Shown: positions 8,351 to 63,512 of the stretch, piece after piece
Position numbering within the stretch: position 1 is the first letter of the stretch
How the letters are laid out: the number at the start of each line of letters is the position of its first letter
IMG/VR virus record: IMGVR_UViG_3300031787_007614
Location: 62,001 to 126,000 of that record
Direction: 5' to 3' (one strand)
DNA length: 64,000 nt
The notes under the pieces: generated by a model
Told to the model about the DNA's origin: nothing
The model's input: only the letters and a program-made list of their open reading frames with translations
Database searches by the model: none
Translations under genes and position numbers: made by a program

Positions 8351-8351
8351 A

Positions 8352-27600: not shown

Positions 27601-29267
27601 GCAATTTGGAAAGTGGTAGTGGTTGGAATGGCCACAACATAATATGTGGTGCCAGCAGTGATTCCGCCAAAACTGGTTCCTTCAAAAACCACTTCGGCAC
27701 CAATATAAAAATCTGCTCTTGCAGTACTGTTGCAAGTTATTATGTTTGTGCCAGCTGTGGTTGCTGTGCAAATTACACTTTTTGCCCGTACCTGAATATT
27801 AAAACTGTAGGTTACTTCTGTAACACCTTGATCAGGAATAAAGCCATAATACCATCCTGAGTTTGGATCCAATGTCAATCCTGGTGGTAGTCCAAACCCT
27901 TGATTGACCGAAATGACGTAGTCAAGTTCGTCTTTGTCGTAGTCTTGTCCAATGAATCTGTATGCATAGTAATTGTCTCCTCGAGCAATGCCAAGATCGC
28001 TAGGATCATAATTCAACAAGAACGGAGCACGTTCGGGAGTTTCATCAGCAGTAACAAACACCGAGTCAGCAGTAATGTATGTGTCATCAGCCACAAGGTC
28101 TTCACGATTGTAAACAAATATAGTGAATGTTCTTATGTTGCTGGTTTTACCATCAGTGATTTCCAATGTAAATTGATAGTTACGACTCACTGCTGCACTG
28201 ATAAAGTCAAAAGGTACTGTGGCTATAGGTGTGAGGTCGTATCCTGGAGTTTCGTCTTCGTTGGGTGCAGGTGCAATATATCCTGAAATCAATCCACTGG
28301 TGCTCAGTCGCAATCCTGGCGGCAACTCACCAGCAATTTTTCTAATTATCACAGCCTCATTGTTATCAGTAGTGGTGTATTCAATTTGCAATTCAACTCT
28401 ATCGCCATCATAGTATTCACCAACCACACCGTTGATTGGAGTGCTGGTCATTGACTGGCTGATACTAACTGCGTAGGTACCAGTTCCGCCCACACCGTTG
28501 ATTAGCCCAATGATAGTGGTACCTACTTCGATGCCAGGCCCTTTGAGACTCATGCCCAGTTGCACAGTTCCAGACACCAATGAAGTAACGTTTAGTGTGG
28601 TTCCTGAAATGCTGCCAATAAAGCTCGCAGTATTATTGTCTGCAAACGCACCAGCAGGAGTCACAAACTCTGGAATATCATTGCCACTCACAGTAATTTC
28701 AAACGTTCGATCTGCAATACGGTCAGGAACTTCGATGCCGTTTACCATTTTTTCTGTATATGCTCTTAGCGTAAATTTACTGGTAACATCCTCGTTGACT
28801 TCTGTAGGAACACCTTGTAAGCTGGCAACAGCCTGCGGAACTCCAGCAATCAATCCAGTGGCACTGCATTGAACACCTGCTGGCAGTGTGCCAGCAATCA
28901 TTCTGTAGTACAATGGTTTGTACAGTCTGGCTACCAGCAAGCCAGTAGCAGTGGTCAATGCTACAGCAGTGGTGGCAGTGGCAGTGGTTGCAACAGAAAA
29001 TTGTGTTGCGCTGTTGATTGTAAAAACATAGTATTGTGCCAGTTGCGTCAACCCACCAAAACTAGTACCATTAAAAACAATAACCTGACCAACTATCATA
29101 CCAGTGGTGCTGTCGCAAGTTATGAGATTGGTAGTAGCTGTGGTAGTAGTACAAGTTATTGGGTCGCCCACTGGTGGTGTGGTTGCCCGCATGGACTGCT
29201 GGTAAAATACACCTTCGGGTATGACCCCTAGGTCGCCTGCTGGAGTGATCCAAGTTGGTTGTGCCAT
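24648..29267 (-). CDS. large baseplate/tail structural protein with Ig-like and repeated beta modules
   Basis: 1539 aa; several LPxGLxL..G.ISG Ig-like motifs; about 5 repeats of CTATT..TN.ITC.ST...VG..V.F.GT.FGG...YYV. Confidence 0.8.
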   Translation of the reverse strand: MAQPTWITPAGDLGVIPEGVFYQQSMRATTPPVGDPITCTTTTATTNLITCDSTTGMIVGQVIVFNGTSFGGLTQLAQYYVFTINSATQFSVATTATATTAVALTTATGLLVARLYKPLYYRMIAGTLPAGVQCSATGLIAGVPQAVASLQGVPTEVNEDVTSKFTLRAYTEKMVNGIEVPDRIADRTFEITVSGNDIPEFVTPAGAFADNNTASFIGSISGTTLNVTSLVSGTVQLGMSLKGPGIEVGTTIIGLINGVGGTGTYAVSISQSMTSTPINGVVGEYYDGDRVELQIEYTTTDNNEAVIIRKIAGELPPGLRLSTSGLISGYIAPAPNEDETPGYDLTPIATVPFDFISAAVSRNYQFTLEITDGKTSNIRTFTIFVYNREDLVADDTYITADSVFVTADETPERAPFLLNYDPSDLGIARGDNYYAYRFIGQDYDKDELDYVISVNQGFGLPPGLTLDPNSGWYYGFIPDQGVTEVTYSFNIQVRAKSVICTATTAGTNIITCNSTARADFYIGAEVVFEGTSFGGITAGTTYYVVAIPTTTTFQIATSIVGSPITLSTATGELKGVPVDIPQSQLYPFTLTISGAVDAEVTWLTPSDLGSIENGSTSLLKVEAVNRGGVELLYRLKSGAFNELPQGLVLLPSGEIAGRVTFNTFAIDLGETTFDRSQSTISGTQETTWDSSFTFTVNAYAEDTEQIIYKVSEVIVNSGGIGYSSPTIEFSTPIGATAVQAEGTLTASAGAITAVTITEQGAGYTSPATFTITGAGSGANLSVVMAPTGTRDVISVFKTFTVRVIREYNKPYQNLFVLAMPPQNDRALLRQLLTNTDIFVPDYIFRPDDPNFGLSTRVKYEHAFGLAPDSFSTYVESLYLNHYWKNLVLGEISTAQAVDPVTGEVVYEVVYSKIIDNLVNASGQSVNKIVTLPYAIIDPLDGSTQLTSVYPNSLINMRDQVIDVVGQISTKLPLWMTSKQSNGRVLGFTPAWVICYAKPNRSKQIAYYLEEYFGNQLNKIDFKVDRYELDATLSRNWDTTTQDWTPQPNLTTFDRVNTTGFTDLGLVNGATELAFADVNGRTLAEINALGGIDGTTEVIIGSFPAPDAEVYLEDGSIIIFVKQEGYSGSPGSNYSDLNQAWSNNIDSFDEEGFDSAASSAVAIPGTYDYGPLVNEGYAQTCTATTASTNVITCDSTLGMTVGDKVWFTGTTFGGIDNENSNAQTEVYYVRTVSNVTASATLTGSNRITVSSSTPFAIGDEVWFSGTVFGNISRYAATGLPKPYYVVDVPTATTIVVSETLGGSALGLSSASGSMTVYYGAFTVTATAGSSTAVTLSTAAGTMTANYGNDRMSMYTVNLENTGGDIICTATTSIGNWITTGSIGLLGINYQIYFTGTLIGGISSDQLYYIVSIDASNNRFAISNVQGGPTVNLVTATGVMNAEAINYIVNLTEYTQTVTNDYVTTTQGQKYTGGTYLYRPGNAPQDLIYVKWLPLITATTVVSTETIFDQGSLQFIEPVDMYDPSDRSDKYLVFPKANILA

Positions 29268-29277
29268 ATGTTATTTC

Positions 29278-32200
29278 TTAAGCTATTTGGTCCCAAGCAG
29301 ACCCGGTCCATAATCTCAAAGCGCCAAAGCTGGTACTGTAATAAAGTTGGCCTGTAACAGGGCTTGCTGGATCGCTAGACGCAACGGGTATAATCATTCT
29401 GGATGTGGCCTGTACATTTCCACCGGTGACATTCCCAGCACTTGTCTCACCTGTGACACTTAGGCTAGTCAGTGTTCCTACAGAAGTAATATTGGGTTGT
29501 GCCGCAGTGGTCACTGTACCAGCAGTGGTAGCAGAAGTAGCAGAAGTAGCAGTGGTAGCAGATGACGCACTGGCTGCAAAAATAGCATTGGCTACTGATC
29601 CAGTAACATTAGCACCAGGAATGAAAGACAAGCCAGCGCCTGAGCCAATGAATAGAGCTGCCACTACGTTAGCAGAGGCTGAAATAGTAGTACCACTGAT
29701 TACATTGGCGCCGGTGATATTACCAGTAGCGCCTGTGGTAACAAATCCGCCACCAGTGACATTACCAGTAACGGATAAATTGGCCAATGTGCCTAATTGT
29801 GTGATGTTGGTCTGTATTGATGTAGTTAGTAATCCGCTGACCTGGGTTGCTGAAACATTATTGGCAATCACATTTCCTAACGCTGACAAGTTGCCAGATG
29901 CTGAAACACTACCGCCGGTGACAATATTGGCACCATTGATGTTGCCAGTCACTAGCAAATTATTGGTTATTTTATTAAATTGCAATCCAGATGTGGCATT
30001 GGCTGTGTTGTTGTCATTGAACAGCACAAACGTATTACCGCCAGGTGCTGTCAAATTACCTGTGACGGTAGTAGCTATAATATTACCCACAAACAACGGT
30101 GCAATAACATTGGCAGCAGCAGAAATCTGACCAGTAGCGGTGTAATTGCCACCACTGATGTTTGCAGCTGAAGTAATGTTTCCAGTAGCAGTGACCAATC
30201 CCACAGTGGTTACATTACCACCAATCACGTTGCCTGTAGAGCTAAACACGCCAGATGAATACATGCTACCACCTGTAACAATGTTGCCACCAATCACGTT
30301 GCCTGTACTTGATACTACCCCGCCGGTGTTTATGTTGCCGCCGGTGACGTTACCTGTGGATGTGATTAGTCCACCTGTGGTTAAGTTTCCACCAATCACA
30401 TTGGCTGTCACGCTGACAGTTGTGCCAGTGTGATTTGTAGCAGAAATATTTCCGCCAATGATGTTACCGGTAGCCGTGATCAACCCAGCAGTTCGTATGT
30501 TTCCTCCAGTTACGTTGCCTGTGCCAGAAATAGCGCCAGCAGCTTGCACATCACCTGTGGCGCTGACTGTGCCCTGTGCGTCAATGTTGCCCACAACTAA
30601 ATTTCCATAGTTGTTGACAGTAACAACTTCACTGGCAATAGTAACTTGAACTGCGGCAATCAATTTGTCTGCAGAATTGTCGTAACCAATAAATGCTGAT
30701 CTTTCAGCTGTGGTAAAATACCAAAGTTGTTCACCACGGTCCTTACCATCATTGGTTACCAATGGTTGATTGTTTGCAGCTCTACCAATACCAATGATTG
30801 GATCCTCAACTGCTAGAGTGGTAACATTGGTATATTCTGTGTCGCCTGACACAGTTAGGTTACCAGCAATTACTGCGTCACCGCCCACAATAAGACCCGC
30901 CGAAGTCACAACATTGGCACCATTTACATTGCCTGCGGTAGAAATATTGCCGCCAATTATGTTACCACTTATGGTAAACACATTGGAAGTCTTGTCAAAA
31001 GTCATTCCAGCACTGGCGTTGGCCAAACCATTATCATTAAAAAGAACTTGTGTGTTTGATCCAGCAACTGAAAGATTTCCAGATATGTTACCAACCACAT
31101 TGCCAATGAAATTTGGAGCAGTTATGTTACCGCTTGCTGTTACAGTTCCACCAGTAAGCAAGTTGCCACCAGTGATATTGCTCACTGCACTCAACGTGGA
31201 TCCTACCACCACACTGTTCACAATGTTTGCAGATCCCAACCCAATTATGTTGTTACCAGTGACGTCGCCTGTGGCACTAACTTGACCAGCTGTTCTTAAA
31301 TTACCGCCTGTGACGTTGCCACTTGCGGATATAATAGTGCTGGTGATGTTGTTGGTTGAGCTGATGTTGTTGCCAGTTACGTTGGCATTGGCAACTATAT
31401 TGGCGCCAGTTATGTCTCCGCTGGCAGTGATTGTGCCACCAACAGATATCAATCCAACAGTAACAAAGTTGGCGCCAATGATGTTACCTGTTGCTGATAC
31501 AGTTGCACTGGTTGACAAGTTGTTACTGGTAATATTTCCTGATCCACCAAGCGCATTGCTTACCACCAATGAATTTAAATCACCAAGCGTGGTCAAACTT
31601 GAGTTGATCACGTTAGCACTGAGTGTGGTTCCTGTAAGCAACGCAGCATTTGAACTAACGCTGATGCCTGTTAATTGACTGCCGTTACCAATGACGTATG
31701 CACCTGTAACGTTGCCTGCGGCACTGATTGTGCCAGTGGCCAACACACTACCTGACAAAATTGCACTGTCACCTATTAAATTGCCAGATGCATTCACAAT
31801 ACCAGTGTTTATGTTTTGTGAAATAATATTGCCAGATGAAGAAACTACTCCAGCTGTGGTTAGGTTCCCGCCAACCACATTTCCAGTAGCAGTGAGATTG
31901 GCCAGTGTGCCAACTGTGGTAAAACTGGCCGAAGTTACGTTGGCACTGAGTACATTTCCAGTCAATAATGCTGCATTGGCCTGGCTAACCACACCAGTAA
32001 GTTGACTGCCGTTACCAATATAAAATCCGCCGGCGCTGATGTTGCCAGTGGCACTGATTGCTGAGTTTGCTAATAATGTGCCTTTTACTGTGGCACCTGT
32101 GCCCGAAACAACCAGCACGTTTGCAACGTTGGCTGCACTCACACTAACTGTTGAATTTTCAACAATTTGAATGTTTGAAGTACCGTTAGCAATGCCCGAA

Positions 32201-32319
32201 ATACCACCAATATTGTAGAGTTCTGTAAAATTGTCATTGACAATTGTGAACGCTGTTCTCAGTGGTGATCCGGTGCCGTCGTTGGCAGTATTGCCAGTAT
32301 CAATAAATTGTTGTGCCAT
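29278..32319 (-). CDS. long tail-fibre-like protein
   Basis: N-terminal TGNTANDGTGSPLRTAF..NDNFTELY baseplate-attachment motif; extensive SATGNVxGGN repeats. Confidence 0.8.
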   Translation of the reverse strand: MAQQFIDTGNTANDGTGSPLRTAFTIVNDNFTELYNIGGISGIANGTSNIQIVENSTVSVSAANVANVLVVSGTGATVKGTLLANSAISATGNISAGGFYIGNGSQLTGVVSQANAALLTGNVLSANVTSASFTTVGTLANLTATGNVVGGNLTTAGVVSSSGNIISQNINTGIVNASGNLIGDSAILSGSVLATGTISAAGNVTGAYVIGNGSQLTGISVSSNAALLTGTTLSANVINSSLTTLGDLNSLVVSNALGGSGNITSNNLSTSATVSATGNIIGANFVTVGLISVGGTITASGDITGANIVANANVTGNNISSTNNITSTIISASGNVTGGNLRTAGQVSATGDVTGNNIIGLGSANIVNSVVVGSTLSAVSNITGGNLLTGGTVTASGNITAPNFIGNVVGNISGNLSVAGSNTQVLFNDNGLANASAGMTFDKTSNVFTISGNIIGGNISTAGNVNGANVVTSAGLIVGGDAVIAGNLTVSGDTEYTNVTTLAVEDPIIGIGRAANNQPLVTNDGKDRGEQLWYFTTAERSAFIGYDNSADKLIAAVQVTIASEVVTVNNYGNLVVGNIDAQGTVSATGDVQAAGAISGTGNVTGGNIRTAGLITATGNIIGGNISATNHTGTTVSVTANVIGGNLTTGGLITSTGNVTGGNINTGGVVSSTGNVIGGNIVTGGSMYSSGVFSSTGNVIGGNVTTVGLVTATGNITSAANISGGNYTATGQISAAANVIAPLFVGNIIATTVTGNLTAPGGNTFVLFNDNNTANATSGLQFNKITNNLLVTGNINGANIVTGGSVSASGNLSALGNVIANNVSATQVSGLLTTSIQTNITQLGTLANLSVTGNVTGGGFVTTGATGNITGANVISGTTISASANVVAALFIGSGAGLSFIPGANVTGSVANAIFAASASSATTATSATSATTAGTVTTAAQPNITSVGTLTSLSVTGETSAGNVTGGNVQATSRMIIPVASSDPASPVTGQLYYSTSFGALRLWTGSAWDQIA

Positions 32320-40298: not shown

Positions 40299-41459
40299 TC
40301 ATGCTAAAAATTTTGTCAATGCCAGCACCACATTGGTACCACCAAATGCAAAGCTGTTGTTCAAACACACATCTTGTTCATGCTCAACAACCTCAGTTGG
40401 TAGGTACACACCTTCAGGAATTGCAGGATCAGGATCAGTTAGATTCCAATTGGGAATAATTTGATTTGTTTTTAGCACAGCCAAACAAGCCAGCAGTTCC
40501 ATGGCTCCAGAGTTGCCCAACAAGTGCCCGTGCAGTGCCTTGGTTGAACTGATGGGAACGCCACTGCCAAATACTTTTTGTATACTACTTAATTCAACCA
40601 AGTCTCCAACAGGTGTGCCTGTGCCATGTGCGTTGATATAGGTCACACGACTTGGATCAATACCATTCAGTGCAGATTGCATGGCAGAGATCTGACCTTG
40701 TTCACTGGGCTTGGTTAGAGTTTCGCTGCCACAACTGATACCATATCCCACAATTTCTGCATGTATCACAGCATTTCGAACCAGCGCATGATCCAAACTT
40801 TCTAGAACATAAACAACACTGCCTTCGCCCAAGATGATGCCATCTCGTGTGGCACTGAATGGTGCAGACTTTGTGCCCATGGCCCGCATGGCCCGCCATT
40901 GGTCCACTAAAATGGGACTGAGGCAAAATTCGGCGCCGCCGGCTGCCATAACGCTGACCTCGCCATGTTTGATGGCTTTGTATGCTTCTCCAATAGACAC
41001 ACTGCTGGAAGCACATGCCGCTGTGTGTGTGAACACAGGACCTGTGATGTTGTCTTTTGACGCAATAAAACTGGCTGCGCCACTGCTCATTGATGATACC
41101 AAACTGTTTGGACGCACTCGACCTTTATCCTGGAATTCAAGAATGGTGTTGTTCACTTCGTAGGCAGCACCTGCGCCTGTACCAATGTAAACACCATCCA
41201 CACTGGTTTTTGCATCTGCTTTTGCTTGTTGGTATGCCAGCATGGTGGCGCGAGCAAACAAACTTGTGGCCGCAGTATCATAACGATCAAATTGATCATT
41301 GATGTTGCTGTGTCCTAATCCAACCTTGGCAGTGTTGGCCTGGAGAGTTTCACTAAAAATGATGCCTGATGTTCCTGCATACATGGCAGCAACAACTTGA
41401 TCATAACTATTGCCCAATGGAGTAATGCAACCCACTCCTGTAATAACTACTCTATTCAT
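40299..41459 (-). CDS. beta-ketoacyl-ACP synthase (FabF / NodE-like)
   Basis: RVVITGVG, TAACASS (Cys), INAHGTGT (His), KALHGHLLG (His), NSFAFGG. Confidence 0.95.
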   Translation of the reverse strand: MNRVVITGVGCITPLGNSYDQVVAAMYAGTSGIIFSETLQANTAKVGLGHSNINDQFDRYDTAATSLFARATMLAYQQAKADAKTSVDGVYIGTGAGAAYEVNNTILEFQDKGRVRPNSLVSSMSSGAASFIASKDNITGPVFTHTAACASSSVSIGEAYKAIKHGEVSVMAAGGAEFCLSPILVDQWRAMRAMGTKSAPFSATRDGIILGEGSVVYVLESLDHALVRNAVIHAEIVGYGISCGSETLTKPSEQGQISAMQSALNGIDPSRVTYINAHGTGTPVGDLVELSSIQKVFGSGVPISSTKALHGHLLGNSGAMELLACLAVLKTNQIIPNWNLTDPDPAIPEGVYLPTEVVEHEQDVCLNNSFAFGGTNVVLALTKFLA

Positions 41460-42205
41460 GTTTTGATCAGTCGAATAAATTGTGCCGCATAGTCAACTTC
41501 CCACCACTGCTCACGTTGATTCCACCGTTGTGGATTGGCATGATGATTGTTGTGCCATTCTCCAATGACTAGGGCTAGATAGCTATTTGAACTGGTATCC
41601 TTTGTGGCATGATTCTGATAGGTGGTCAAACCGTGAGTGTGACACACGGTGTTCACAAAACCCATGGCCAACAATGCTCCTGCATTAGCAATACTATAGC
41701 ACAAAAACAATACGGGGTCAATGGCCAATAGCACCAATGCAAACGTCAAAACAATCAATGCGTAATAATTGTGAGTGAACTTCATCCAAGGATCTCTTAG
41801 ATCTCTAATGCCATCCCACATGCTGAGATTGGACAAGTTCCAATTGAACAGTATCACATTGAGAATTCCAATGTCTGGAGCATGTGGATCTTGTGCAGTG
41901 TCTGTGTGTACATGATGGGCTCGGTGGATGATGGAATAACCAACTGGTGACCCAAAACAGGCCAAACAAGAACTCACACACAAAAATGCATGCCAAAACG
42001 GAGTGACTGTGTAACTGCGGTGTGAGAAGTATCTATGCAATCCTGCATGGTGTGAGATGAACAACAAAAAACTGTAAAAGAACACAAGGTATATTGCGTA
42101 CCACCAATGCCATTGATATACCAATACTGGTATGCCCAGCATCGCAACAATCAATTGAACTGAGAGAACCTGTTTGGTTCTGTCAGGATCACCTTGCCAA
42201 ATCAT
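41456..42205 (-). CDS. membrane fatty acid desaturase (delta-9-like, His-box family)
   Basis: HRYFSH, HRAHH, DPH, EWHNNHH boxes; hydrophobic segments. Confidence 0.92.
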   Translation of the reverse strand: MIWQGDPDRTKQVLSVQLIVAMLGIPVLVYQWHWWYAIYLVFFYSFLLFISHHAGLHRYFSHRSYTVTPFWHAFLCVSSCLACFGSPVGYSIIHRAHHVHTDTAQDPHAPDIGILNVILFNWNLSNLSMWDGIRDLRDPWMKFTHNYYALIVLTFALVLLAIDPVLFLCYSIANAGALLAMGFVNTVCHTHGLTTYQNHATKDTSSNSYLALVIGEWHNNHHANPQRWNQREQWWEVDYAAQFIRLIKT

Positions 42206-42480
42206 TTTTTAACACGATTGACCGGATCGTTCACAGCTTCGGTCAAACTGTCAATGATTTCTGCCAAGTTAGCTGGCTGACTCATGTCAGCAGAGTTTAC
42301 TTTGATGCCAAGTTCATCTTCAACATCAAATATCATTTCAATCACAGACAGTGAATCAATCTTGGGATTGATATTTTGCAAGTCTGCAAGAGGTGCATCC
42401 TCTGCAAAGTTGTCAATGTCTAGATCGTACTGTTTTTTGCAAATCCTCAAAATAACTGTTTTGACTTCGTCGCGTGTCAT
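42202..42480 (-). CDS. acyl carrier protein
   Basis: acidic 92 aa; IDSLSVIEMIFDVEDELGI phosphopantetheine-attachment motif. Confidence 0.9.
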   Translation of the reverse strand: MTRDEVKTVILRICKKQYDLDIDNFAEDAPLADLQNINPKIDSLSVIEMIFDVEDELGIKVNSADMSQPANLAEIIDSLTEAVNDPVNRVKK

Positions 42481-43747: not shown

Positions 43748-44062
43748 TTACTTAAAAAGTATTAAGGCCATCAAAACCGCTTGCACAATGAATCCTGCAC
43801 CCACTGTGATGATGTTGAGCATGTCTTTGAGCACCACTGCCCGTAAGAACAGCAGGACCAGGCCGGCCCACATAAACAGCACAATGTCCAAACTGGGTGT
43901 GCGATCACTAAGTCCGGTCATCAGCGCCAAAAGTGTGGGAATGGTTGCGGCATGAATCACAATGGCCGCTAGCCAACCTAGTGTTTCTGCGGAGATTTTT
44001 GGCAAGTGATCTTTCAGCCAAAGTTGCAGGATTTCGGCTGTGTGTTGCAAGTCAAATTTCAT
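43748..44062 (-). CDS. 3-TM membrane protein
   Basis: three hydrophobic helices; ETLGW...IP motif. Confidence 0.7.
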   Translation of the reverse strand: MKFDLQHTAEILQLWLKDHLPKISAETLGWLAAIVIHAATIPTLLALMTGLSDRTPSLDIVLFMWAGLVLLFLRAVVLKDMLNIITVGAGFIVQAVLMALILFK

Positions 44063-44667
44063 CGTTTATCTCCGTAAAAAATGTGTCGGCCAATCTTTTC
44101 AATACGCGGTTTGCCCCAGTTGGGATTCACATAGTCTGCATGATAATATAGGGCGTTTTTCAAGCCAGGCAATCGGAAGTTTTCCAACAGCACCTTCTTG
44201 GCCACTTCTTCGCTTTCGCGCCACAGTGGAGTATAAACTGCTCGTGTTTTGTGATTGGTTTCGCAGTACCAGGAGAACTGGCATACTACCTTTTCATAAA
44301 ACACATTTTTTTGATAAACCACGCCACACACGGAATCAGGAAAACGTCCAGATTCCACACGGTTCATTGTGACTTGAGCCACTGCCACTTTGCCTTCAAA
44401 AGGCTCTGAGGCTGCTTCCCAGTAGATGTTACGGGTAAGGCAGTCCAGTTGTCGAGTGCGCTCGGCAGCAGACACATAGCCTGCTGGTAGATTTCCTGTT
44501 TGTTCGCGCAAGGCATCCAGTCGGCTTTGACACACTGCAATCACAGTGGCAACGACCAACCAGAAGCCTAGGGCTTTCAGGATGCGTGAGCTCCATGTGG
44601 CCCACCTGTTGAGAGAGATAGTTTTTTCTTTCATGGTAGTTTTACTTACTGGAATGGTTGCTATCAC
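44059..44667 (-). CDS. cell wall hydrolase (SleB / Hydrolase_2 family)
   Basis: CLTRNIYWEA.SEP.EGKVAVAQVTMNRV, CQFSW, YYHADYVNPNW, IGRHIFY. Confidence 0.9.
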   Translation of the reverse strand: MIATIPVSKTTMKEKTISLNRWATWSSRILKALGFWLVVATVIAVCQSRLDALREQTGNLPAGYVSAAERTRQLDCLTRNIYWEAASEPFEGKVAVAQVTMNRVESGRFPDSVCGVVYQKNVFYEKVVCQFSWYCETNHKTRAVYTPLWRESEEVAKKVLLENFRLPGLKNALYYHADYVNPNWGKPRIEKIGRHIFYGDKR

Positions 44668-44721: not shown

Positions 44722-45534
44722 TCAAAACTTGCAGACCGGTATTGGCAGCATCTTGTGCATGTTTCTAGCACGAATGTCTTGGTACCGCTTGAGTTTTTTT
44801 CTATCATCTGCTGACAATTTGGCGCTGCCAGGCATGTCGGAGTCCACAGCCTTGCATCGTTGCAAAAAGTCCAAGGCCATCATGCGCTCAAGATCTGGGT
44901 AGCTCATGCCCAGTTGACCTTCGTCTGTGCGCCCATCATCCCACAAGCCGTCGGTGGGTGCGGCATCAATGATTTCTTGTGGCAGCCCAAACTCTCTACC
45001 CATATCCCATACTTCTGTTTTCATGCAGTCGCCGATGGGGCTGATATCCACACCACCATCACCATACTTGGTAAAGAAGCCCACACCAAAGTCTTCCACT
45101 CGGTTGCCGGTGCCTACTACAATACCACCATGGCATTGTGCAATTTGGTACAAGGTCATCATACGCAATCTAGCACGTGAGTTGGCAAAAGCCAGTTCAA
45201 CTTGTGATGCATTTTCTGCATCACAAAATGGCACAGTTTTCTTTTCAAACGCAGAGAACACAGACGTCAAATCCATGCTCATGTGTGTGACGTTTTTGTA
45301 GCGTTCCATCAACCAGGTAGCCTGCATTGAACTGCGATTGTCCAGCTTCTTGTTTTGGCGGATGGGCATTTGCACCACAATGGTTGTGAGTCCTGTTTCG
45401 GCGCATAATGCACTCACAACAGATGAGTCAATCCCACCTGAGATCCCTACAACTAGTGTAGAGATCTTGTTTTTTGTTGCGTATTGTCGGATCCATTTTA
45501 CAATGTGCTTGATACGTTGCTTTGGTGTTACCAT
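44722..45534 (-). CDS. nadE: NH3-dependent NAD+ synthetase
   Basis: GISGGIDSS, NSRARLRM, GTGN, GFFTKYGDGG, PTDGLW, DEGQLG; start MVTPK at 45534. Confidence 0.93.
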   Translation of the reverse strand: MVTPKQRIKHIVKWIRQYATKNKISTLVVGISGGIDSSVVSALCAETGLTTIVVQMPIRQNKKLDNRSSMQATWLMERYKNVTHMSMDLTSVFSAFEKKTVPFCDAENASQVELAFANSRARLRMMTLYQIAQCHGGIVVGTGNRVEDFGVGFFTKYGDGGVDISPIGDCMKTEVWDMGREFGLPQEIIDAAPTDGLWDDGRTDEGQLGMSYPDLERMMALDFLQRCKAVDSDMPGSAKLSADDRKKLKRYQDIRARNMHKMLPIPVCKF

Positions 45535-46064
45535 TTGACCTCCGGCTTGGGCATTGCTTTTAGTTTGTTCCATACTTCTGCTTTTTCCTTGCATTTCTTT
45601 TCCAGCTTGCGATAGCGTTCTCCCAGTCGGCGCAGATCATCCCACTCTCGTTCCAGTTCAGGATTTGGTGTGAGAATGTTCAGGCGTTCTTCAACCTTTT
45701 CCATCCAGTCTTTAAGACTCTTGCCATTGATGTCAAGATCAGCTTTGTCCCCTCTAAGACTCATCTTGCCACCTTGTTCAATCGTAGATCCTACTGCACT
45801 GTAATTTGCACCAATTGTAAAACTGCCTGTGGTTGTGTTGTTTGTGGTCCAAACAGTGTTGGAGCCAGTGGCACCGTTGAGTCCACCAATGGTGTATCCG
45901 CCAGTGATGTTGGTGGTATCACTTATGATTACAGTTGGCATGGTATTTGCATCAAATGCACTTACCAATGGGGGAATAGCACCGTAAGAAGGGTCGGTTG
46001 TTAGGTCGTTATATTCGTATTCTTTGAGGTTGAGGTTTACCCAGTCGTTTTTATAAGTTGCCAT
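45528..46064 (-). CDS. hypothetical protein
   Basis: 178 aa; Thr-rich N-terminus and coiled-coil C-terminus. Confidence 0.65.
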   Translation of the reverse strand: MATYKNDWVNLNLKEYEYNDLTTDPSYGAIPPLVSAFDANTMPTVIISDTTNITGGYTIGGLNGATGSNTVWTTNNTTTGSFTIGANYSAVGSTIEQGGKMSLRGDKADLDINGKSLKDWMEKVEERLNILTPNPELEREWDDLRRLGERYRKLEKKCKEKAEVWNKLKAMPKPEVKW

Positions 46065-46204
46065 GTTCCGTCTTTGTTGTCAATCCACTGAACGGTGTCG
46101 CCTACGGCCCAGCCTAGTTCGGCGCACAATTCAGTGCCAAGATCCAACAACAGTTCTTCAGGGTTGTTGGGATCCTCAATTACCTGTACAGTCCTAGTCA
46201 TCAT
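46037..46204 (-). CDS. AbrB/MazE-like small DNA-binding protein (not in ORF track)
   Basis: MMTRTVQVIEDPNNPEELLLDLGTELCAELGWAVGDTVQWIDNKDGTWQLIK; LGW..GD.V.W signature. Confidence 0.65.
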   Translation of the reverse strand: MMTRTVQVIEDPNNPEELLLDLGTELCAELGWAVGDTVQWIDNKDGTWQLIKTTG

Positions 46205-46889
46205 TTTTGATGCCAAACAGTTGCAGTAGGTTCACAAAAATGTTGATGAAGTCCATGTACAATGTGAGCGCACCTAAGATTTCTGCAGGTGTATCTGCGT
46301 CATCTGTGGATACCATTTCACGGATTTGTTGTGTGTCGTAGGCTGTGAGGCCCAGGAATATAATGATCGCAATGGCAGAGATAACCATGGTCATCACTGA
46401 ACTGCCAATAAAGATGTTCACAATACTTGCAATGATTATGGCAACAAGTCCTATGATCAAAAATTGCCCAAAGCTCTCCAAACTGCGTTTGGTAAAGTAT
46501 CCGTAAAAACTCATGGTAGCAAACAGAATGGCACTTGAAGCAAACGCCATTACCAAACTACCTGTGGTATAAACATGCACAATGGCGCCCATGCTCAGGC
46601 CCATTACACCTGCGAATCCATGCAACAGTCCCACAGCCACTCGGTGTGGTGGGTTGTTGGCCAGTGCATAACTAACTCCAAATACTGCTACCAAGGGCAA
46701 GAACAGCGTGATCCATTTCATCACTCCAGTGAAAAAGAATGCCATTGCGGCTGGACTGGATGCTACTAATCCAGCTACTACGGCACTGGTCACAATGGCC
46801 ATGAGCATATGATTGTACACACGCAACATGGCCGAATTGACTTCACCTGCTGTTCTGTAAGATGTTTCCTGTATGGTTGCTTCGTACAT
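46194..46889 (-). CDS. Bax inhibitor-1 / YccA family membrane protein
   Basis: about 7 TM helices; RVY..M, YGY.TKR.L, TAYDTQ.I, GAL.LY.DFIN.F. Confidence 0.9.
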   Translation of the reverse strand: MYEATIQETSYRTAGEVNSAMLRVYNHMLMAIVTSAVVAGLVASSPAAMAFFFTGVMKWITLFLPLVAVFGVSYALANNPPHRVAVGLLHGFAGVMGLSMGAIVHVYTTGSLVMAFASSAILFATMSFYGYFTKRSLESFGQFLIIGLVAIIIASIVNIFIGSSVMTMVISAIAIIIFLGLTAYDTQQIREMVSTDDADTPAEILGALTLYMDFINIFVNLLQLFGIKNDD

Positions 46890-47031
46890 GATGTTCTCCT
46901 CGAAGTTTACTATAATGGTGAGCCCGAGCAAATTTGTTTTGAATCAATTGCTCGCGTTGCTCTCGGGACATAAACATGGGCCAAGATTCCTCATGTGGTT
47001 TATGTAATTGCTGTTCCTTATCCTTGGTCAT
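46843..47031 (-). CDS. hypothetical protein
   Basis: 62-aa ORF, ATGA-coupled to the upstream gene. Confidence 0.45.
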   Translation of the reverse strand: MTKDKEQQLHKPHEESWPMFMSREQREQLIQNKFARAHHYSKLRGEHHVRSNHTGNILQNSR

Positions 47032-56230: not shown

Positions 56231-56436
56231 TACCAGCTTCCATCATCTACCCAAAAACGCACAGTCACAAACAACCAACTTGCACGCCAGGTGCGTTCGT
56301 TGGGACTGGGCCAGCCATCATTATATTCACGGCGAGCCCGCGGCATCAAGCTCCAATGCAGTGGGTTCAGTGAAACAATCACTGCGGCACCACTGTATCG
56401 AATCCACTTTAGATATCTACTGTGATCAGTTGCCAT
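56230..56436 (-). CDS. hypothetical protein
   Basis: LNPLHW...WVDDGSW. Confidence 0.65.
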   Translation of the reverse strand: MATDHSRYLKWIRYSGAAVIVSLNPLHWSLMPRARREYNDGWPSPNERTWRASWLFVTVRFWVDDGSW

Positions 56437-57296
56437 CTGTCTGCTGATTCCTCATAGTTAATATAGCCTCTGGGATTGCACACCACACGGGTTGACCCAA
56501 TCCGGTAGTCAAAGTCGTGATGTGTGTGCCCATGTGTCCACAGTTTGATCTGTGGATGATCGATGATGTAGTCATCTAGACTGCTGGAGTAGCCACCATT
56601 CATGACGGCATCATCTGCATACCGCGCATGAGTTGACATCCTGCTGGGTGCATGATGTCCTGCCACCACAAACTTTTGATCAAACTTGCCTTCGACAATT
56701 TGCTGAATATAACTGGTAAACTTTTTAAATTCATCCACAGCATCCTCAGGCGAAAACTTGCCCACACGCTCACGGAATACAGGTCGTTCTCTATTGTCCA
56801 CACCGTTGATCTGCTCGTAGGTTTTGTAGTTGACAACTCTGTTGCTGTTGGTTACACAGCGGAAGTCATTCATCATGCTCTTCATGTGATACAGTGTGGT
56901 GGGATCTTCTTTATTCATGTCTGTCCACAAGGTGCCACCAATGAAAGTGACATCATCAATCTGTTTGATTTCATTGTCCAACAGGTAAACATTACTCAGC
57001 ATGTTTGACTCCAACATGCTCTTGATCTTGTTGTAAGTGGTAGCAAAGTCTCCATGGTAGTGTTCGTGGTTGCCCAAGATATAAATCACATGCGGAAACT
57101 GAAACGAACAACGTTTGAAAAAATCCACAATTCTATTGCTTCTAGCACTTTCCAAAATGCCATGCGGGTCCGGGCGGCTAATATCAGCCGCAACACAAAT
57201 GTCGCCTGACAGGATCAACACATCAGCATGGTCCTTGTTGTCAAAATACAAGTCTCCAAATTCAAGATGCAGATCCGACGCTACTGCTATTTTCAT
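56409..57296 (-). CDS. calcineurin-like metallophosphoesterase
   Basis: SDLHLE, SGDI, GNHEHY, HHAP, HGHTH, NPRGY. Confidence 0.92.
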   Translation of the reverse strand: MKIAVASDLHLEFGDLYFDNKDHADVLILSGDICVAADISRPDPHGILESARSNRIVDFFKRCSFQFPHVIYILGNHEHYHGDFATTYNKIKSMLESNMLSNVYLLDNEIKQIDDVTFIGGTLWTDMNKEDPTTLYHMKSMMNDFRCVTNSNRVVNYKTYEQINGVDNRERPVFRERVGKFSPEDAVDEFKKFTSYIQQIVEGKFDQKFVVAGHHAPSRMSTHARYADDAVMNGGYSSSLDDYIIDHPQIKLWTHGHTHHDFDYRIGSTRVVCNPRGYINYEESADRWQLITVDI

Positions 57297-58889: not shown

Positions 58890-59029
58890 CACAGTTTGGC
58901 AAGTCATTTGCCAAAGTATTTTAGATTGGCAACATGCCCAAACTCAGTAAACCCTTTGCCAGGCTGCCGCGTTATATATGTGTAGCCAGGAAGGTCTTGG
59001 TCTACAAGTTTCTAACTCAAGGAGATACC

Positions 59030-59233
59030 ATGAAACAATTGATCGCTCTCATTGCCGCTGCCGTTGCAGTTACCGCTTTTGCCCAGGCACCTGCTGCCAA
59101 AAAAGAAGAAGCCAAAAAGCCTGCTGACAAGGTTGAAGCCAAGGCACCTGCTGCCGCTCCTGCTGCCGCTCCTGCTGCCGCTCCTGCACCAGCTGCCAAG
59201 AAAGATGAAAAGAAAGCCGACGCCAAGAAGTGA
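59030..59233 (+). CDS. small secreted Ala/Pro/Lys-rich protein
   Basis: AAGGAG RBS; signal peptide MKQLIALIAAAVAVTAFA; (PAAA)n repeat. Confidence 0.8.
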   Translation: MKQLIALIAAAVAVTAFAQAPAAKKEEAKKPADKVEAKAPAAAPAAAPAAAPAPAAKKDEKKADAKK

Positions 59234-59452
59234 ATCCTGGTTCGTAGGCCCCACCTAGTTCTCATTGATCCCAATCTGCTAGATGATTCTGAAGTAATTG
59301 ATTATGGCGAATTTGGTCTGCACCGTGGGTATTCAAGACCCAGAATGGTACAAGACTCAGACAACGATGAAGAAGTTTCAGACCATGTGGCAGTTAGACT
59401 GTGGATTGCAAGGCTCAGGGCCATGGAAAAGTTTCGTGAAGTAACTTCATAA
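59234..59452 (+). CDS. probable 72-codon gene lacking a canonical start, in frame with the upstream gene
   Basis: open frame ILVRRPHLVLIDPNLLDD...VRLWIARLRAMEKFREVTS* ending just before a terminator. Confidence 0.45.
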   Translation: MLVRRPHLVLIDPNLLDDSEVIDYGEFGLHRGYSRPRMVQDSDNDEEVSDHVAVRLWIARLRAMEKFREVTS

Positions 59453-59461
59453 GATTTTGCC

Positions 59462-59485
59462 AAAAAGCCCGCTTCGGCGGGCTTT
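59462..59485 (+). terminator. intrinsic terminator (UUCG hairpin)
   Basis: AAAGCCCGC-TTCG-GCGGGCTTT. Confidence 0.8.
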
Positions 59486-59538
59486 GTCATTTTAGTTTAA
59501 CATACAAAGATATAAATAGGCTTATAACATAAGAGAGC

Positions 59539-59976
59539 GTGACTATGTTGCATACCATAACAACACCCGATGACGGTTTGATCACATTGATCAAAGATGA
59601 CCCAGTGCGTCCTGAAATTCCAGCCAGTGATCGTGTGAATTCAAACTCTAGAATTTACGTTTGGAAACAGGATGACCAACCTGCGGCCGTGGTGTGTGTG
59701 AAGTTTTTGGAAAGCATTCCAGCCGCAGTAGACGACATGGTTGACTTGGTCGGGAGTGCCACAACTGCGGTATTTTACACTATTTGGTCATACACTGCTG
59801 GCGCGGGTCGTACATTGATCTTGGAAGCTACTAAAAGCATTGAATCAGAGTTTCCGGGCATTGAAACTTATGTGACTCTAAGTCCAAAGACCGAAATGGC
59901 TCGAAAATTTCACCTGAAGAATGGTGCTCGAGAACTGCGAGAAAATTCTACCACCGTTAATTACATCTATAAGTAA
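59539..59976 (+). CDS. minimal malonyl-CoA decarboxylase-like GNAT-fold protein
   Basis: TAVFYTIWS, GAGR.LI, EFPGIETYVTLSP, FHLKNGA motifs; TATAAATA upstream. Confidence 0.6.
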   Translation: MTMLHTITTPDDGLITLIKDDPVRPEIPASDRVNSNSRIYVWKQDDQPAAVVCVKFLESIPAAVDDMVDLVGSATTAVFYTIWSYTAGAGRTLILEATKSIESEFPGIETYVTLSPKTEMARKFHLKNGARELRENSTTVNYIYK

Positions 59977-60048: not shown

Positions 60049-60276
60049 ATGAGCAAAACACCTTACGAGATCCGTCTCGAACTTCTTACCTTGGCCAAGG
60101 AAATCCTCCAGGCGCCAATTTACGAAAAACGCAGTGAACTTACCAATGAATATCATTCCAAGTTGACCGACGCAAACCGTGAACACTTACCGTTCCCAAC
60201 CATGCCAGACTTTCCGTCCACAACGGACATTATCAGCAAGGCAGAAGAACTCAAGAAGTTTATAGACCAAGCGTAA
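60049..60276 (+). CDS. hypothetical phage protein
   Basis: MSKTPYEIRLELL.LAK...P...DII.KAEELKKFI; AGGAG RBS. Confidence 0.75.
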   Translation: MSKTPYEIRLELLTLAKEILQAPIYEKRSELTNEYHSKLTDANREHLPFPTMPDFPSTTDIISKAEELKKFIDQA

Positions 60277-60281
60277 AAAAG

Positions 60282-60304
60282 AAAAGCCCCGCAAGGGGCT
60301 TTTT
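60282..60304. terminator. bidirectional intrinsic terminator
   Basis: AAAAGCCCC-GCAA-GGGGCTTTTT between convergent genes. Confidence 0.85.
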
Positions 60305-60659: not shown

Positions 60660-61010
60660 TTAACTGCGCAGTTCTTTCACATGTTTACATTCACCACGGA
60701 ATTTGAACCCTGAACATGTGCAAGACCAGTTGCCGTTGATTTCAGTCAATTTGTAAACATCTCCCCGGCTGCCCTGCACTTCAATCACGCGACCTTCGGG
60801 CTCGGGTTCAGCCACTTGGGTTGGAAACTGCACAGGATTCACCATGAACTTGCGCCCACGCATGTCCATGCGGATGGGATTCCGAAACACTTTGATGCTG
60901 TTGGTCACTGGACTGCGGAAAGCATACATCTTGCTCTTGGAGTCATCCAACAGGTAAACGCCGTTCTTGATGGCATCCCGGTAGTCAGTTGTTTCGGCAA
61001 ACCATTTCAT
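60660..61010 (-). CDS. SWIM zinc-finger protein
   Basis: GSRG..Y...WSCTCSGFKFRGECKH. Confidence 0.75.
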   Translation of the reverse strand: MKWFAETTDYRDAIKNGVYLLDDSKSKMYAFRSPVTNSIKVFRNPIRMDMRGRKFMVNPVQFPTQVAEPEPEGRVIEVQGSRGDVYKLTEINGNWSCTCSGFKFRGECKHVKELRS

Positions 61011-62775: not shown

Positions 62776-62876
62776 TTGCTAAATTTTTTAATCGTGTGTT
62801 TGAACTGTTGGTAGCCTGGGGCGACACTGTGCATGAGTACAGAATGAGCCGCGCCAGTCGTACCTGGTACTATTAA
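62772..62876 (+). CDS. 34-aa protein (not in ORF track)
   Basis: [34 protein letters not shown]; ATGA-coupled. Confidence 0.5.
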
Positions 62877-63460
62877 TCTCGTTTGATTAATATTTTATCA
62901 GCAAGGCCATATTCAACTGCTTCGCCAGCAGTCATGAAATTGTCACGTTCCATATCAGCTTTGAGTTGTTTGTGGGGTTTGCCAGTGTGTTTGACATAGA
63001 TATCAGTCAACACAGTTTTCCAACGCAATAGTTCTCGAGCTTGAATTTCCACGTCTGTGGCCTGACCCGATGCGCCGCCCAGGGGTTGATGGATCATGTG
63101 GCGTGCATTGGGCAGGATGTAGCGATTGCCCTTGTCGCCAGCAGCGGCCAACAACGAGCCCATGCTGGCAGCCTGCCCCATCACAATAGTGTGAATTTTG
63201 GGCTTGATAAAGTTCATGGTATCGTAAATGGCCATACCTGCTGTGACTGATCCGCCGGGTGAGTTGATGTACAAGCTGATGGCTTTGTCGGGGTTGTCAC
63301 TTTCCAAAAACAATAACTGCGCACAGATCAAGCTGGCTGTGTGTTGGGTGACTTCTCCGTCCAGCATGATCACACGATCTTTGAGCAAGCGGCTGTAAAG
63401 GTCGTAACTGCGTTCGCCTCGGGAAGTGTTTTCGATAACAATTGGCACTAGATTTGACAT
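62873..63460 (-). CDS. clpP: ATP-dependent Clp protease proteolytic subunit
   Basis: [28 protein letters not shown] (Ser), MIHQP (His), ERD (Asp); start MSNLVP. Confidence 0.96.
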
Positions 63461-63483
63461 GGGGTCTCCTGGTTGATTGCATA

Positions 63484-63512
63484 AGTATAGCATTATTCTC
63501 GGAAGAAAACAA
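63484..63512 (-). promoter_or_regulatory. sigma70-type promoter for clpP
   Basis: TTGTTT-N17-TATACT. Confidence 0.5.

What the first reader, a model, noticed from the sequence alone, without database searches (positions are those of the whole stretch)
59539..59976. Minimal malonyl-CoA decarboxylase-like GNAT retaining both catalytic motifs
Seen: the 145-aa protein carries TAVFYTIWS, EFPGIETYVTLSP and FHLKNGA. Established: the MCD catalytic domain has AIFYSIS, (T/S)LSP containing the catalytic Ser, and NFHLxNGA containing the catalytic His; GNAT-fold decarboxylases also prime PKS loading modules. Here the long insert between the Ser and His motifs and the N-terminal helical domain are absent. 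Inference: a stripped-down malonyl-CoA/ACP decarboxylase that could supply starter units to the ACP-KAS cassette or drain host malonyl-CoA; it may instead be an acetyltransferase.
Basis: partly seen in the sequence, partly recalled or inferred. Interest (0 to 1): 0.7.

Follow-up and report, generated by a model that had tools for sequence, protein, structure and literature searches.

The report
Minimal phage malonyl-CoA decarboxylase homologue
A 143-residue gene of a 364-kb freshwater phage is a true, stripped-down relative of malonyl-CoA decarboxylase that keeps the catalytic residues, belongs to a large uncharacterised phage-only family, probably destroys the host's fatty-acid building block, and is not tied to the phage's own ACP/KAS genes.

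Summary
The ORF is real, but it starts at ATG 59545 (143 aa), not GTG 59539. It carries all three motifs. It matches Pfam MCD (PF05292) above the curated cut-off. In the PDB, its family profile hits only the five MCD structures.

The AlphaFold model (pLDDT 96.8) is a bare GNAT fold. All 143 residues superpose on the MCD catalytic domain at 1.8-2.0 Å (Z 15.6-16.0, 27-34% identity). Ser113, His123, Tyr142 and Phe77 align with human Ser329, His423, Tyr456 and Phe288. Ser, His and Tyr are each kept in 77 of 78 diverse family members.

Missing relative to MCD are:
- the N-terminal helical domain
- the β5-β6 helical insert
- part of the β4-α loop
- the β6-β7 loop
- the C-terminal tail

The family is large: over 7,400 clusters at 90% identity and 369 at 50%. 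It appears to be phage-only, with one cultured carrier, pelagiphage Mosig.

The proposed link to the ACP/KAS cassette is not supported. Near-complete relatives and Mosig carry the gene without KAS or ACP, and no neighbour is conserved.

Most likely it is a cofactor-free malonyl-thioester decarboxylase that drains host malonyl-CoA. The activity and the physiological role are inferred, not shown.

The parts
59545..59976 (+). CDS of the minimal MCD-like GNAT (143 aa plus stop).
   Evidence: for the start and length. Pfam PF05292 at 35.4 bits. AF2 pLDDT 96.8. dN/dS 0.08-0.18.
59599..59634 (+). Codons 19-30, the DPVRPxIPxxxR loop between helix 1 and helix 2. D19 is invariant and P20, V21, R22, P23 and R30 are at least 90% conserved in the family. 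It aligns to HPVK...RR of human MCD, at positions 184-195 of the 4f0x chain in the HMMER alignment.
59695..59697 (+). Cys51 codon, invariant in the mini-family (78/78). Bacterial MCDs have Glu here and human MCD has His254. It is probably a second-shell packing residue.
   Evidence: Froese et al. (PMC3701320) place His254 against Ser290/Tyr289.
59764..59790 (+). Strand β4, TAVFYTIWS (residues 74-82). Phe77 equals human Phe288 and Tyr78 is invariant. Trp81 is family-specific (MCD has Ser).
59791..59817 (+). CoA-pyrophosphate loop (GNAT motif A), Y83-x-x-G86-x-G88-x-x-L91, with canonical GxG spacing. The link from β4 to this loop is 5 residues shorter than in MCD.
59875..59886 (+). T111-L-S113-P114. 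Ser113 (59881-59883) equals the catalytic Ser329 of human MCD and Ser312 of R. palustris MCD. Ser is present in 77/78 members.
59908..59928 (+). F122-H123-L-K-N126-G127-A128. His123 (59911-59913) equals the catalytic His423/His389. Lys121 just before it sits at the position of the 3'-phosphate-binding Arg387 of CurA and RpMCD.
59959..59970 (+). N139-Y-I-Y142 in the last strand. Tyr142 (59968-59970) equals human Tyr456, which hydrogen-bonds the catalytic His. The protein ends one residue later.
   Evidence: The structural alignment ends at human residue 457.
59464..59485 (+). Intrinsic-terminator-like hairpin with a T tract, ending the upstream plus-strand genes. The MCD-like gene therefore seems to start its own unit.
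   Evidence: and the sequence.
60049..60276 (+). 75-aa ORF of unknown function, co-oriented and probably co-transcribed with the MCD-like gene. It is not a conserved partner in other phages.
60282..60303 (.). GC-rich hairpin flanked by A and T runs, a likely bidirectional terminator that closes the plus-strand unit.

Best explanation
The gene encodes the bare GNAT catalytic core of a malonyl-CoA decarboxylase. The protein is a stand-alone, phage-borne enzyme.

Proposed mechanism (inferred):
- It binds the CoA (or phosphopantetheine) arm along strand β4 and the G86-x-G88 loop.
- It uses the Ser113-His123 dyad to polarise the thioester carbonyl. His123 is held by Tyr142.
- It releases CO2 over Phe77 and protonates the enolate, turning malonyl-CoA into acetyl-CoA. 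No cofactor is needed.

Proposed role (inferred): made from its own small transcription unit during infection, it would collapse the host malonyl-CoA pool. That would starve type II fatty-acid synthesis and return C2 units to acetyl-CoA.

Status of each step:
- Shown here: homology, fold, residue conservation, phage-restricted distribution, and independence from the ACP/KAS cassette.
- Not shown: the enzymatic activity, the thioester carrier (CoA or ACP), and the physiological purpose.
For: Sequence:
- PF05292 is above its cut-off and is the only Pfam hit.
- The family profile hits only the five MCD structures in the PDB.

Structure:
- The AF2 model has pLDDT 96.8 and pTM 0.91.
- Foldseek's top 17 PDB hits are all MCD chains.
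- VIA-align gives Z 16.0, 15.7, 15.6 and 14.7 for human, A. vitis and R. palustris MCD. It aligns 141-143 of 143 residues at 1.8-2.1 Å and 27-34% identity.
- Next come the known GNAT-type decarboxylases: SxtA Z 14.2, GphF 13.3, CurA 13.0. Ordinary acetyltransferases share only 9-15% identity.

Residues:
- Ser113, His123 and Tyr142 are each kept in 77/78 members. Phe122, Thr111 and Ala128 are kept in 78/78.
- The columns conserved in both the mini-family and 19 full-length MCDs are the active-site columns.
- Froese et al. show that S329A lowers kcat 110-fold and H423N 7-fold. They also report that other subunits contribute little to the active site and that the β5-β6 insert is poorly conserved. 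A core-only enzyme is therefore plausible.

Distribution:
- There are over 7,400 clusters at 90% identity and 369 at 50%, nearly all 135-160 aa.
- At least 596 IMG/VR contigs carry it.
- All the nearest ESM Atlas clusters shown are viral, mostly 100% and one 88%.
- Only 7 loci were found in 185,579 species genomes, and all are MAG contigs.
- dN/dS is about 0.1.
Against: - No activity data exist for any member.
- The parts MCD has and this protein lacks could matter for substrate binding. These are the helical domain, the insert, the β6-β7 loop with its conserved Asp, and the longer β4-α loop.
- The family has its own invariant residues (Cys51, Trp81, Pro59, the DPVRP loop) whose roles are unknown. 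They could signal a changed substrate or chemistry.
- Phe77 is kept in only 51/78 members.
- With host acetyl-CoA carboxylase still active, an MCD would create an ATP-wasting cycle. The benefit to the phage is therefore not obvious.
- This phage also carries a KAS that needs malonyl-ACP, which sits awkwardly with draining malonyl-CoA.
- Genomic context gives no functional hint.
- Transcription evidence is one low-depth metatranscriptome contig.
- I could not read model coordinates. The Ser-His proximity is inferred from the superposition on MCD, not measured.
Confidence: 0.55

Rival explanations
1. Malonyl-ACP decarboxylase that makes acetyl-ACP primers for the phage's own ACP/desaturase/KAS cassette.
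For: - PKS GNAT-like domains (CurA, GphF, LynB1) decarboxylate malonyl-ACP to prime a KS, and they are close structural matches.
- The genome has ACP and a FabF-type KAS but no FabH, FabD or PPTase, so an alternative primer route would be useful.
- One related phage fragment also carries both genes.
Against: - The gene lies 17 kb from the cassette, on the other strand, in its own terminator-bounded unit.
- The 18 other sampled records with the gene have neither KAS nor ACP. They include records 95% and 98% complete, and complete Mosig.
- KAS-bearing phage contigs 47-69% complete lack the gene.
- FabF-type enzymes can self-prime.
- A basic residue at the 3'-phosphate position (Lys/Arg in 48/78) fits CoA better than ACP, though only weakly.
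Confidence: 0.12
2. An acyltransferase (N-, O- or S-acyl transfer from acetyl- or malonyl-CoA to a host or phage target) that merely descends from the MCD lineage.
For: - The fold is GNAT, and ordinary acetyltransferases score Z 12-13.7.
- Motif A has the canonical GxG spacing.
- 2 of 77 members, and some remote Atlas clusters, also touch PF00583.
- The family-specific invariant Cys51 and Trp81 could serve a new chemistry.
Against: - The general-acid Tyr position of canonical GNATs is His in 77/78 members. The MCD/CurA-type Ser and the His-holding Tyr are kept.
- The window protein gives no PF00583 hit even at E<=10.
- Cys51 aligns with human His254. The MCD paper describes that residue as packing against Ser290/Tyr289, away from the pantetheine.
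- From my own knowledge, unverified here: later work on PKS GNAT-like domains found decarboxylation only (Skiba et al. 2020; the paper was not held).
Confidence: 0.15
3. A decarboxylase of a different carboxy-acyl thioester, such as methylmalonyl-CoA or another substituted malonyl thioester, rather than malonyl-CoA.
For: - GNAT-like decarboxylases accept substituted malonyl units. GphF and SxtA are among the best structural matches.
- Phe77 is variable in the family (Leu, Pro or Ala in 23/78), and Trp81 replaces the MCD Ser next to the pocket.
Against: - Sequence and structure are closest to true MCDs, at 27-34% identity against 13-17%.
- No context genes point to propionate or methylmalonyl metabolism.
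Confidence: 0.1
4. A non-catalytic CoA or acyl-CoA binding protein, acting as a sensor or sequestering factor.
For: The protein is small and lacks several MCD elements. No activity has been shown.
Against: Near-invariance of exactly the catalytic Ser, His and Tyr across members as little as 31% identical to this protein is hard to explain without catalysis.
Confidence: 0.03

Closest known systems
Malonyl-CoA decarboxylase (MCD/MLYCD, bacterial MatA-type; Pfam PF05292; PDB 4f0x, 2ygw, 4ksa, 4ksf, 4ks9)
   Same: - GNAT catalytic core superposes over all 143 residues at 1.8-2.1 Å and 27-34% identity.
- Shared motifs: FY on β4, TLSP with the catalytic Ser, FHLxNGA with the catalytic His, NYxY with the His-holding Tyr, and a conserved Arg30.
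- The active site lies within one subunit.
   Different: - No N-terminal helical oligomerisation domain (about 190 aa).
- No α5-α7 insert between β5 and β6 (11 residues against 56-101).
- The link from β4 into the motif-A loop is 5 residues shorter. The β6-β7 loop is about 14 residues shorter and lacks the conserved Asp. There is no C-terminal tail.
- Cys replaces Glu/His on β3, and Trp replaces Ser at the end of β4.
- It is phage-borne rather than cellular.
GNAT-like decarboxylase domains of PKS loading modules and SxtA (CurA GNAT_L 2ree/2ref, GphF 6mfc, SxtA 7uci)
   Same: - Cofactor-free decarboxylation of malonyl-type thioesters on a GNAT fold, with a His-Ser/Thr dyad and a Tyr that holds the His.
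- 141 of 143 residues align (Z 13.0-14.2).
- They are small, with no MCD helical domain.
   Different: - Only 13-17% identity.
- They are domains inside megasynthases, next to an ACP and a KS, and they act on carrier-bound substrates.
- They use Thr rather than Ser, and CurA has Arg404.
- The phage protein is free-standing and usually has no ACP or KS in the genome.
MadA/MadB (YiiD) malonyl-ACP decarboxylases
   Same: Small bacterial enzymes that decarboxylate malonyl-phosphopantetheine thioesters to acetyl thioesters and thereby affect initiation of fatty-acid synthesis.
   Different: - Catalysis is in a hot-dog fold domain with an Asn loop.
- The GNAT domain of MadA is inactive as a decarboxylase.
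- There is no homology to the phage protein.
Canonical GNAT N-acetyltransferases (Pfam PF00583)
   Same: Overall fold, the β4/β5 splay, a motif-A GxG loop, and a size of about 140-170 aa.
   Different: - 9-15% identity.
[quoted passage not shown] I did not map it in the mini-family.
- The window protein gives no PF00583 hit.

Membership tests
MCD family (Pfam PF05292) | Significant match to the MCD catalytic-domain model | tested here: met
   35.4 bits against a cut-off of 23.2. However, the aligned stretch covers only profile positions 37-145 of 253. 39 of 77 family representatives match at E<=0.01.
MCD family (Pfam PF05292) | Catalytic Ser in (T/S)LSP (human Ser329, RpMCD Ser312) | tested here: met
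   Ser113 aligns to it. Ser is present in 77/78 members.
MCD family (Pfam PF05292) | Catalytic His in FHLxNGA (human His423, RpMCD His389) | tested here: met
   His123 aligns to it. His is present in 77/78 members.
MCD family (Pfam PF05292) | Tyr that hydrogen-bonds the catalytic His (human Tyr456), and Phe on β4 (human Phe288) | tested here: met
   Tyr142 is present in 77/78 members. Phe77 is present here and in 51/78 members. The structural alignment runs to human residue 457.
MCD family (Pfam PF05292) | GNAT-fold catalytic domain structurally closest to MCD | tested here: met
   Z 15.6-16.0 with 143/143 residues aligned, top of both the Foldseek-dependent and the independent search.
MCD family (Pfam PF05292) | N-terminal helical domain (Pfam MCD_N) that mediates dimer/tetramer formation | tested here: not met
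   The protein is 143 aa and its residue 1 aligns to human residue 196. There is no upstream in-frame coding, and a terminator sits at 59464-59485.
MCD family (Pfam PF05292) | Helical insert (α5-α7) between β5 and β6 | tested here: not met
   11 residues between TLSP and FH, against 56-101 in 19 MCDs. The model goes straight from β5 to a single helix.
MCD family (Pfam PF05292) | Malonyl-CoA decarboxylase activity | not testable with these tools
   This needs an enzyme assay. The CoA co-folding job was not run by the tool.
PKS loading-module GNAT-like decarboxylases (CurA type) | Embedded in a PKS module with an adjacent ACP and KS | tested here: not met
   It is a stand-alone gene. KAS and ACP are 17 kb away here and absent from most carriers.
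PKS loading-module GNAT-like decarboxylases (CurA type) | His-Thr dyad plus Arg404 | tested here: not met
   The dyad residue is Ser (MCD type). The β6-β7 loop that carries the Arg404/Asp position is deleted.
Canonical GNAT N-acetyltransferases (PF00583) | Match to the Acetyltransf_1 model, and a Tyr general acid on the helix after β5 | tested here: not met
   No PF00583 hit at E<=10. The position is His in 77/78 members.
Canonical GNAT N-acetyltransferases (PF00583) | Motif A (Q/R)xxGx(G/A) pyrophosphate loop | tested here: met
   YxxG86xG88xxL91 has canonical spacing, with Tyr in place of Q/R.

The most novel reading that the evidence does not exclude
A very abundant, phage-exclusive family of 143-residue enzymes is the minimal functional unit of malonyl-CoA decarboxylase. 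On this reading it is a previously unrecognised auxiliary metabolic gene. Aquatic phages, from T4-like pelagiphages to 350-kb jumbo phages, would use it to wipe out host malonyl-CoA and so switch off membrane-lipid synthesis during infection. It would also show that the MCD helical domain and insert are dispensable for catalysis.
Probability: 0.4. Interest if true: 0.75.

Novelty: new variant of a known kind. Interest (0 to 1): 0.6.

Why it matters
**Phage biology.** If active, this would be the smallest known MCD-type decarboxylase. It would also be a new class of phage auxiliary metabolic gene aimed at the committed intermediate of bacterial fatty-acid synthesis. It is present in thousands of aquatic phage lineages, and one cultured model (pelagiphage Mosig on Pelagibacter HTCC1062) could be used to test it.

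**Enzymology.** It defines which parts of MCD are needed for chemistry. Human MCD is a disease gene and a drug target.

**Engineering.** It would offer a compact tool for manipulating malonyl-CoA pools.

**Annotation.** Automatic pipelines already tag some members as 'MCD C-terminal domain'. I found no paper that describes or tests the family.

Tried and rejected
- **CoA co-folding.** It gives no evidence either way.
- **Model coordinates.** They are not readable, so I could not measure the Ser-His distance. I rely on the superposition on MCD.
- **Job failures.** The first exhaustive representative search was lost and had to be re-run. The 77-row alignment was too diverse for pattern-based locus finding, so I used the 11-row one. 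That search reaches only close relatives, so 'rare in cellular genomes' is a lower-sensitivity statement.
- **Other libraries.** PHROGs gave only a meaningless 0.26 hit. NCBIfam and PADLOC gave nothing. BFVD gave only generic GNATs.
- **Fusions.** Longer family members (188-359 aa) showed no informative fusion domain.
- **Neighbours.** Clustering the neighbours of 82 loci found no partner present in more than about half. The recurrent ones look like synteny within one phage group: a DnaB-like helicase, a nucleotidyltransferase, Bax1-I and a 2OG oxygenase. Distant members sit among small early-type genes.
- **Cultured phages.** tblastn with three different members found only Mosig.
- **Transcription.** Metatranscriptome contigs cover only the first third of the gene, at low depth.
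- **Phylogeny.** Whether the family is a reduced MCD or an early offshoot therefore stays open.
- **Literature.** The Skiba et al. 2020 paper was not held.

Full report
**1. The observation**

The ORF at 59539..59976 (+) is present and translates to a protein containing TAVFYTIWS, EFPGIETYVTLSP and FHLKNGA. Homologues are almost all 143-145 aa and begin MLH.... An AAGAGAG run lies 7 nt before ATG 59545. The real CDS is therefore 59545..59976 (143 aa).

A terminator-like hairpin with a T tract sits at 59464-59485, just upstream. A second GC-rich hairpin at 60282-60303 follows a co-oriented 75-aa ORF at 60049-60276. The gene thus heads a small plus-strand unit in a region that is otherwise mostly minus-strand.

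dN/dS against relatives is about 0.08-0.18, with saturated dS. One low-depth metatranscriptome contig runs from 59366 to 59720. That is weak evidence of transcription.

**2. Homology to malonyl-CoA decarboxylase**

- Pfam gives a single hit at E<=10: PF05292 (MCD C-terminal domain), 35.4 bits against a curated cut-off of 23.2.
- phmmer against PDB sequences finds bacterial MCDs 4ksf and 4ksa.
- A profile of 77 diverse family members hits the five MCD entries and no other GNAT.
- In those alignments the block from the DPVRP loop to TLSP aligns as one stretch. The FHLxNGA block aligns separately, about 65-90 residues further along the MCD chain.
- In 19 full-length alphaproteobacterial MCDs fetched here, TLSP to FH spans 56-101 residues. 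In this protein it spans 11.

**3. Structure**

AlphaFold2 with the 77-row alignment gives pLDDT 96.8 and pTM 0.91. The topology is a plain GNAT: β1, α1, α2, β2, β3, β4, α3, β5, α4, β6, β7.

| Search | Result |
|---|---|
| Foldseek against the PDB | First 17 hits are all MCD chains (E 1.5e-8 to 6e-7, 19-29% identity). Ordinary GNATs follow at about 1e-5, and CurA is at rank 33. |
| VIA-align, second look | Human MCD Z 16.0 and 15.7, A. vitis 15.6, R. palustris 14.7. 141-143 of 143 residues aligned at 1.8-2.1 Å, 27-34% identity, onto human residues 196-457. |
| VIA-align, next hits | SxtA decarboxylase domain 14.2, serotonin N-acetyltransferase 13.7, GphF GNAT-like decarboxylase 13.3, CurA GNAT_L 13.0. 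|
| VIA-align, independent of Foldseek | Same order as above. |
| AlphaFold DB clusters | Best match is a 132-aa metagenomic mini-member, followed by full-length MCDs. |

Every residue of the phage protein therefore has a counterpart in the MCD catalytic domain. MCD carries about 119 extra residues within that range, plus the helical domain.

**4. Residue map**

I used the HMMER alignments, a MAFFT alignment of 40 mini-members with 19 MCDs, and the MCD structure paper (PMC3701320).

| Phage residue | MCD equivalent | Role in MCD | Conservation in family |
|---|---|---|---|
| Ser113 | human Ser329 / RpMCD Ser312 | catalytic | 77/78 |
| His123 | His423 / His389 | catalytic | 77/78 |
| Tyr142 | Tyr456 | holds the His | 77/78 |
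| Phe77 | Phe288 | lies under the leaving carboxylate | 51/78 |
| Lys121 | Arg387 of CurA and RpMCD | binds the 3'-phosphate | Lys/Arg in 48/78 |
| G86-x-G88-x-x-L91 | motif A | CoA pyrophosphate loop | canonical spacing |

The columns conserved and identical in both families are Arg30, Leu65, Ala75, Tyr78, Gly86, TLSP, FH, NGA, Asn134, Asn139 and Tyr142.

Family-specific invariants are Asp19-Pro-Val-Arg-Pro23, Cys51, Pro59, Trp81 and Thr116. MCD has Glu or His at the Cys51 position and Ser at the Trp81 position. Human His254, the Cys51 equivalent, is described as packing against Ser290/Tyr289. Cys51 is therefore more likely structural than catalytic. This is an inference.

The paper also reports three points that make an active core-only enzyme plausible:
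- S329A costs 110-fold in kcat and H423N costs 7-fold.
- Other subunits contribute little to the active site.
- The β5-β6 insert is poorly conserved.

Relative to MCD, the phage protein lacks:
- the helical domain
- the insert
- 5 residues between β4 and the motif-A loop
- about 14 residues of the β6-β7 loop, including the conserved Asp
- the C-terminal tail

**5. The family and where it lives**

- The word-indexed search found 7,405 clusters (90% identity) at E<=1e-3, nearly all 143 aa and mostly labelled hypothetical.
- The exhaustive search found 369 clusters at 50% identity, 208 of them at E<=1e-10.
- At least 596 IMG/VR contigs encode a relative.
- All the nearest ESM Atlas clusters shown are viral, mostly 100% and one 88%.
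- Only 7 loci appear in one-genome-per-species sets of 185,579 prokaryotes. All are in MAG contigs and were found with patterns that reach only close relatives.
- Among 50,697 GenBank phage records, only Pelagibacter phage Mosig has it. The gene is Mosig_00145, labelled hypothetical, and lies between thyX and gp59 in the replication module.

The window belongs to a complete 364,404-bp virus record with terminal repeats. The sequence recurs in freshwater and lake metagenomes.

**6. Link to the ACP/KAS cassette**

The window does carry ACP (42202-42480), a membrane fatty-acid desaturase (41456-42205) and a FabF-type KAS (40299-41459) on the minus strand. The genome lacks FabD, FabH and a PPTase.

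I searched 21 records that carry the mini-MCD:
- KAS and ACP were found only in this phage and its two identical records.
- They were absent from relatives that are 95% and 98% complete, and from complete Mosig.

Searching from the KAS side gave a matching picture:
- One further related fragment has both genes.
- Three more distant KAS-bearing contigs (47-69% complete) have no mini-MCD.

No neighbour is shared by more than about half of 82 loci, and none is lipid-related. The gene is therefore a free-standing accessory gene, and the cassette link fails as a general explanation. It remains possible as a local side use in this phage.

**7. Mechanism**

I commit to a cofactor-free malonyl-thioester decarboxylase, most likely acting on malonyl-CoA. 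It would work as MCD does, through enolate stabilisation by the Ser-His dyad.

The physiological reading is inference. Draining host malonyl-CoA would stop type II fatty-acid synthesis and return acetyl-CoA. It has real difficulties: a futile cycle with acetyl-CoA carboxylase, and coexistence with a phage KAS in this genome.

The rivals are a malonyl-ACP primer enzyme, an acyltransferase, a decarboxylase with another substrate, and a non-catalytic binder. Each is listed in the report with what would refute it.

**8. Comparison and novelty**

It works like MCD and like the PKS GNAT-like decarboxylases. It meets the sequence, fold and catalytic-residue criteria of the MCD family. It fails the architectural criteria: no helical domain and no insert.

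It is not a PKS domain and not a canonical acetyltransferase. MadA/MadB are functional analogues on a different fold.

Literature searches found no description of a phage MCD. I rate it a new variant of a known kind, real, abundant and untested.

Noticed in passing
window 40299-42480 (-): A compact cassette of ACP (92 aa), a membrane fatty-acid desaturase (249 aa) and a FabF-type beta-ketoacyl-ACP synthase (386 aa). The genome has no FabD, FabH or PPTase. The cassette recurs in a few other large phage contigs at 47-75% identity.
   Followed up: partly
window 1727-4009 (-) and 62873-63493 (-): The phage encodes both a ClpA/ClpB-like double AAA+ unfoldase (Clp_N, AAA, AAA_2, ClpB_D2-small) and a ClpP protease (273 bits). 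Together they could form a phage-borne Clp protease system.
   Followed up: no
window 24648-29267 (-) and 29278-32319 (-): Two very large adjacent ORFs (1539 and 1013 aa) with no Pfam match. The two ORFs after them on the plus strand (755 and 735 aa) are also essentially unannotated.
   Followed up: no
window 58934-59233 (+): A 99-aa protein with a signal-peptide-like start and an Ala/Pro/Lys-rich repeat tail (APAAAP repeats). This stretch had the highest summed contig depth of the region in four freshwater metatranscriptomes. Many of those contigs run on into unlike sequence, so other organisms' low-complexity genes may contribute.
   Followed up: partly
window 44722-45594 (-), 46194-46931 (-), 44059-44667 (-): NAD synthase, a Bax1-I/YccA-type membrane protein and a cell-wall hydrolase. 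The Bax1-I gene lies directly next to the mini-MCD gene in many related phages (32 of 82 loci), though not here.
   Followed up: partly
window 6803-8350 (-), 18192-19349 (-), 56409-57296 (-), 60660-61010 (-): A subtilase, a radical-SAM/SPASM enzyme, a metallophosphoesterase, and a small protein with a SWIM-like CxC...CKH zinc-finger motif.
   Followed up: no
G000:C1:363512-363808 (outside the window): A second, weak ketoacyl-synthase-like match (30 bits, 326-aa frame) near the end of the phage genome.
   Followed up: no
L002 (Pelagibacter phage Mosig MT647606) 7920-8405: The only cultured-phage member of the family, Mosig_00145 (161 aa, hypothetical). It lies between thyX and the gp59 helicase loader, next to a phage tmRNA gene, and offers a laboratory handle on the family.
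   Followed up: partly
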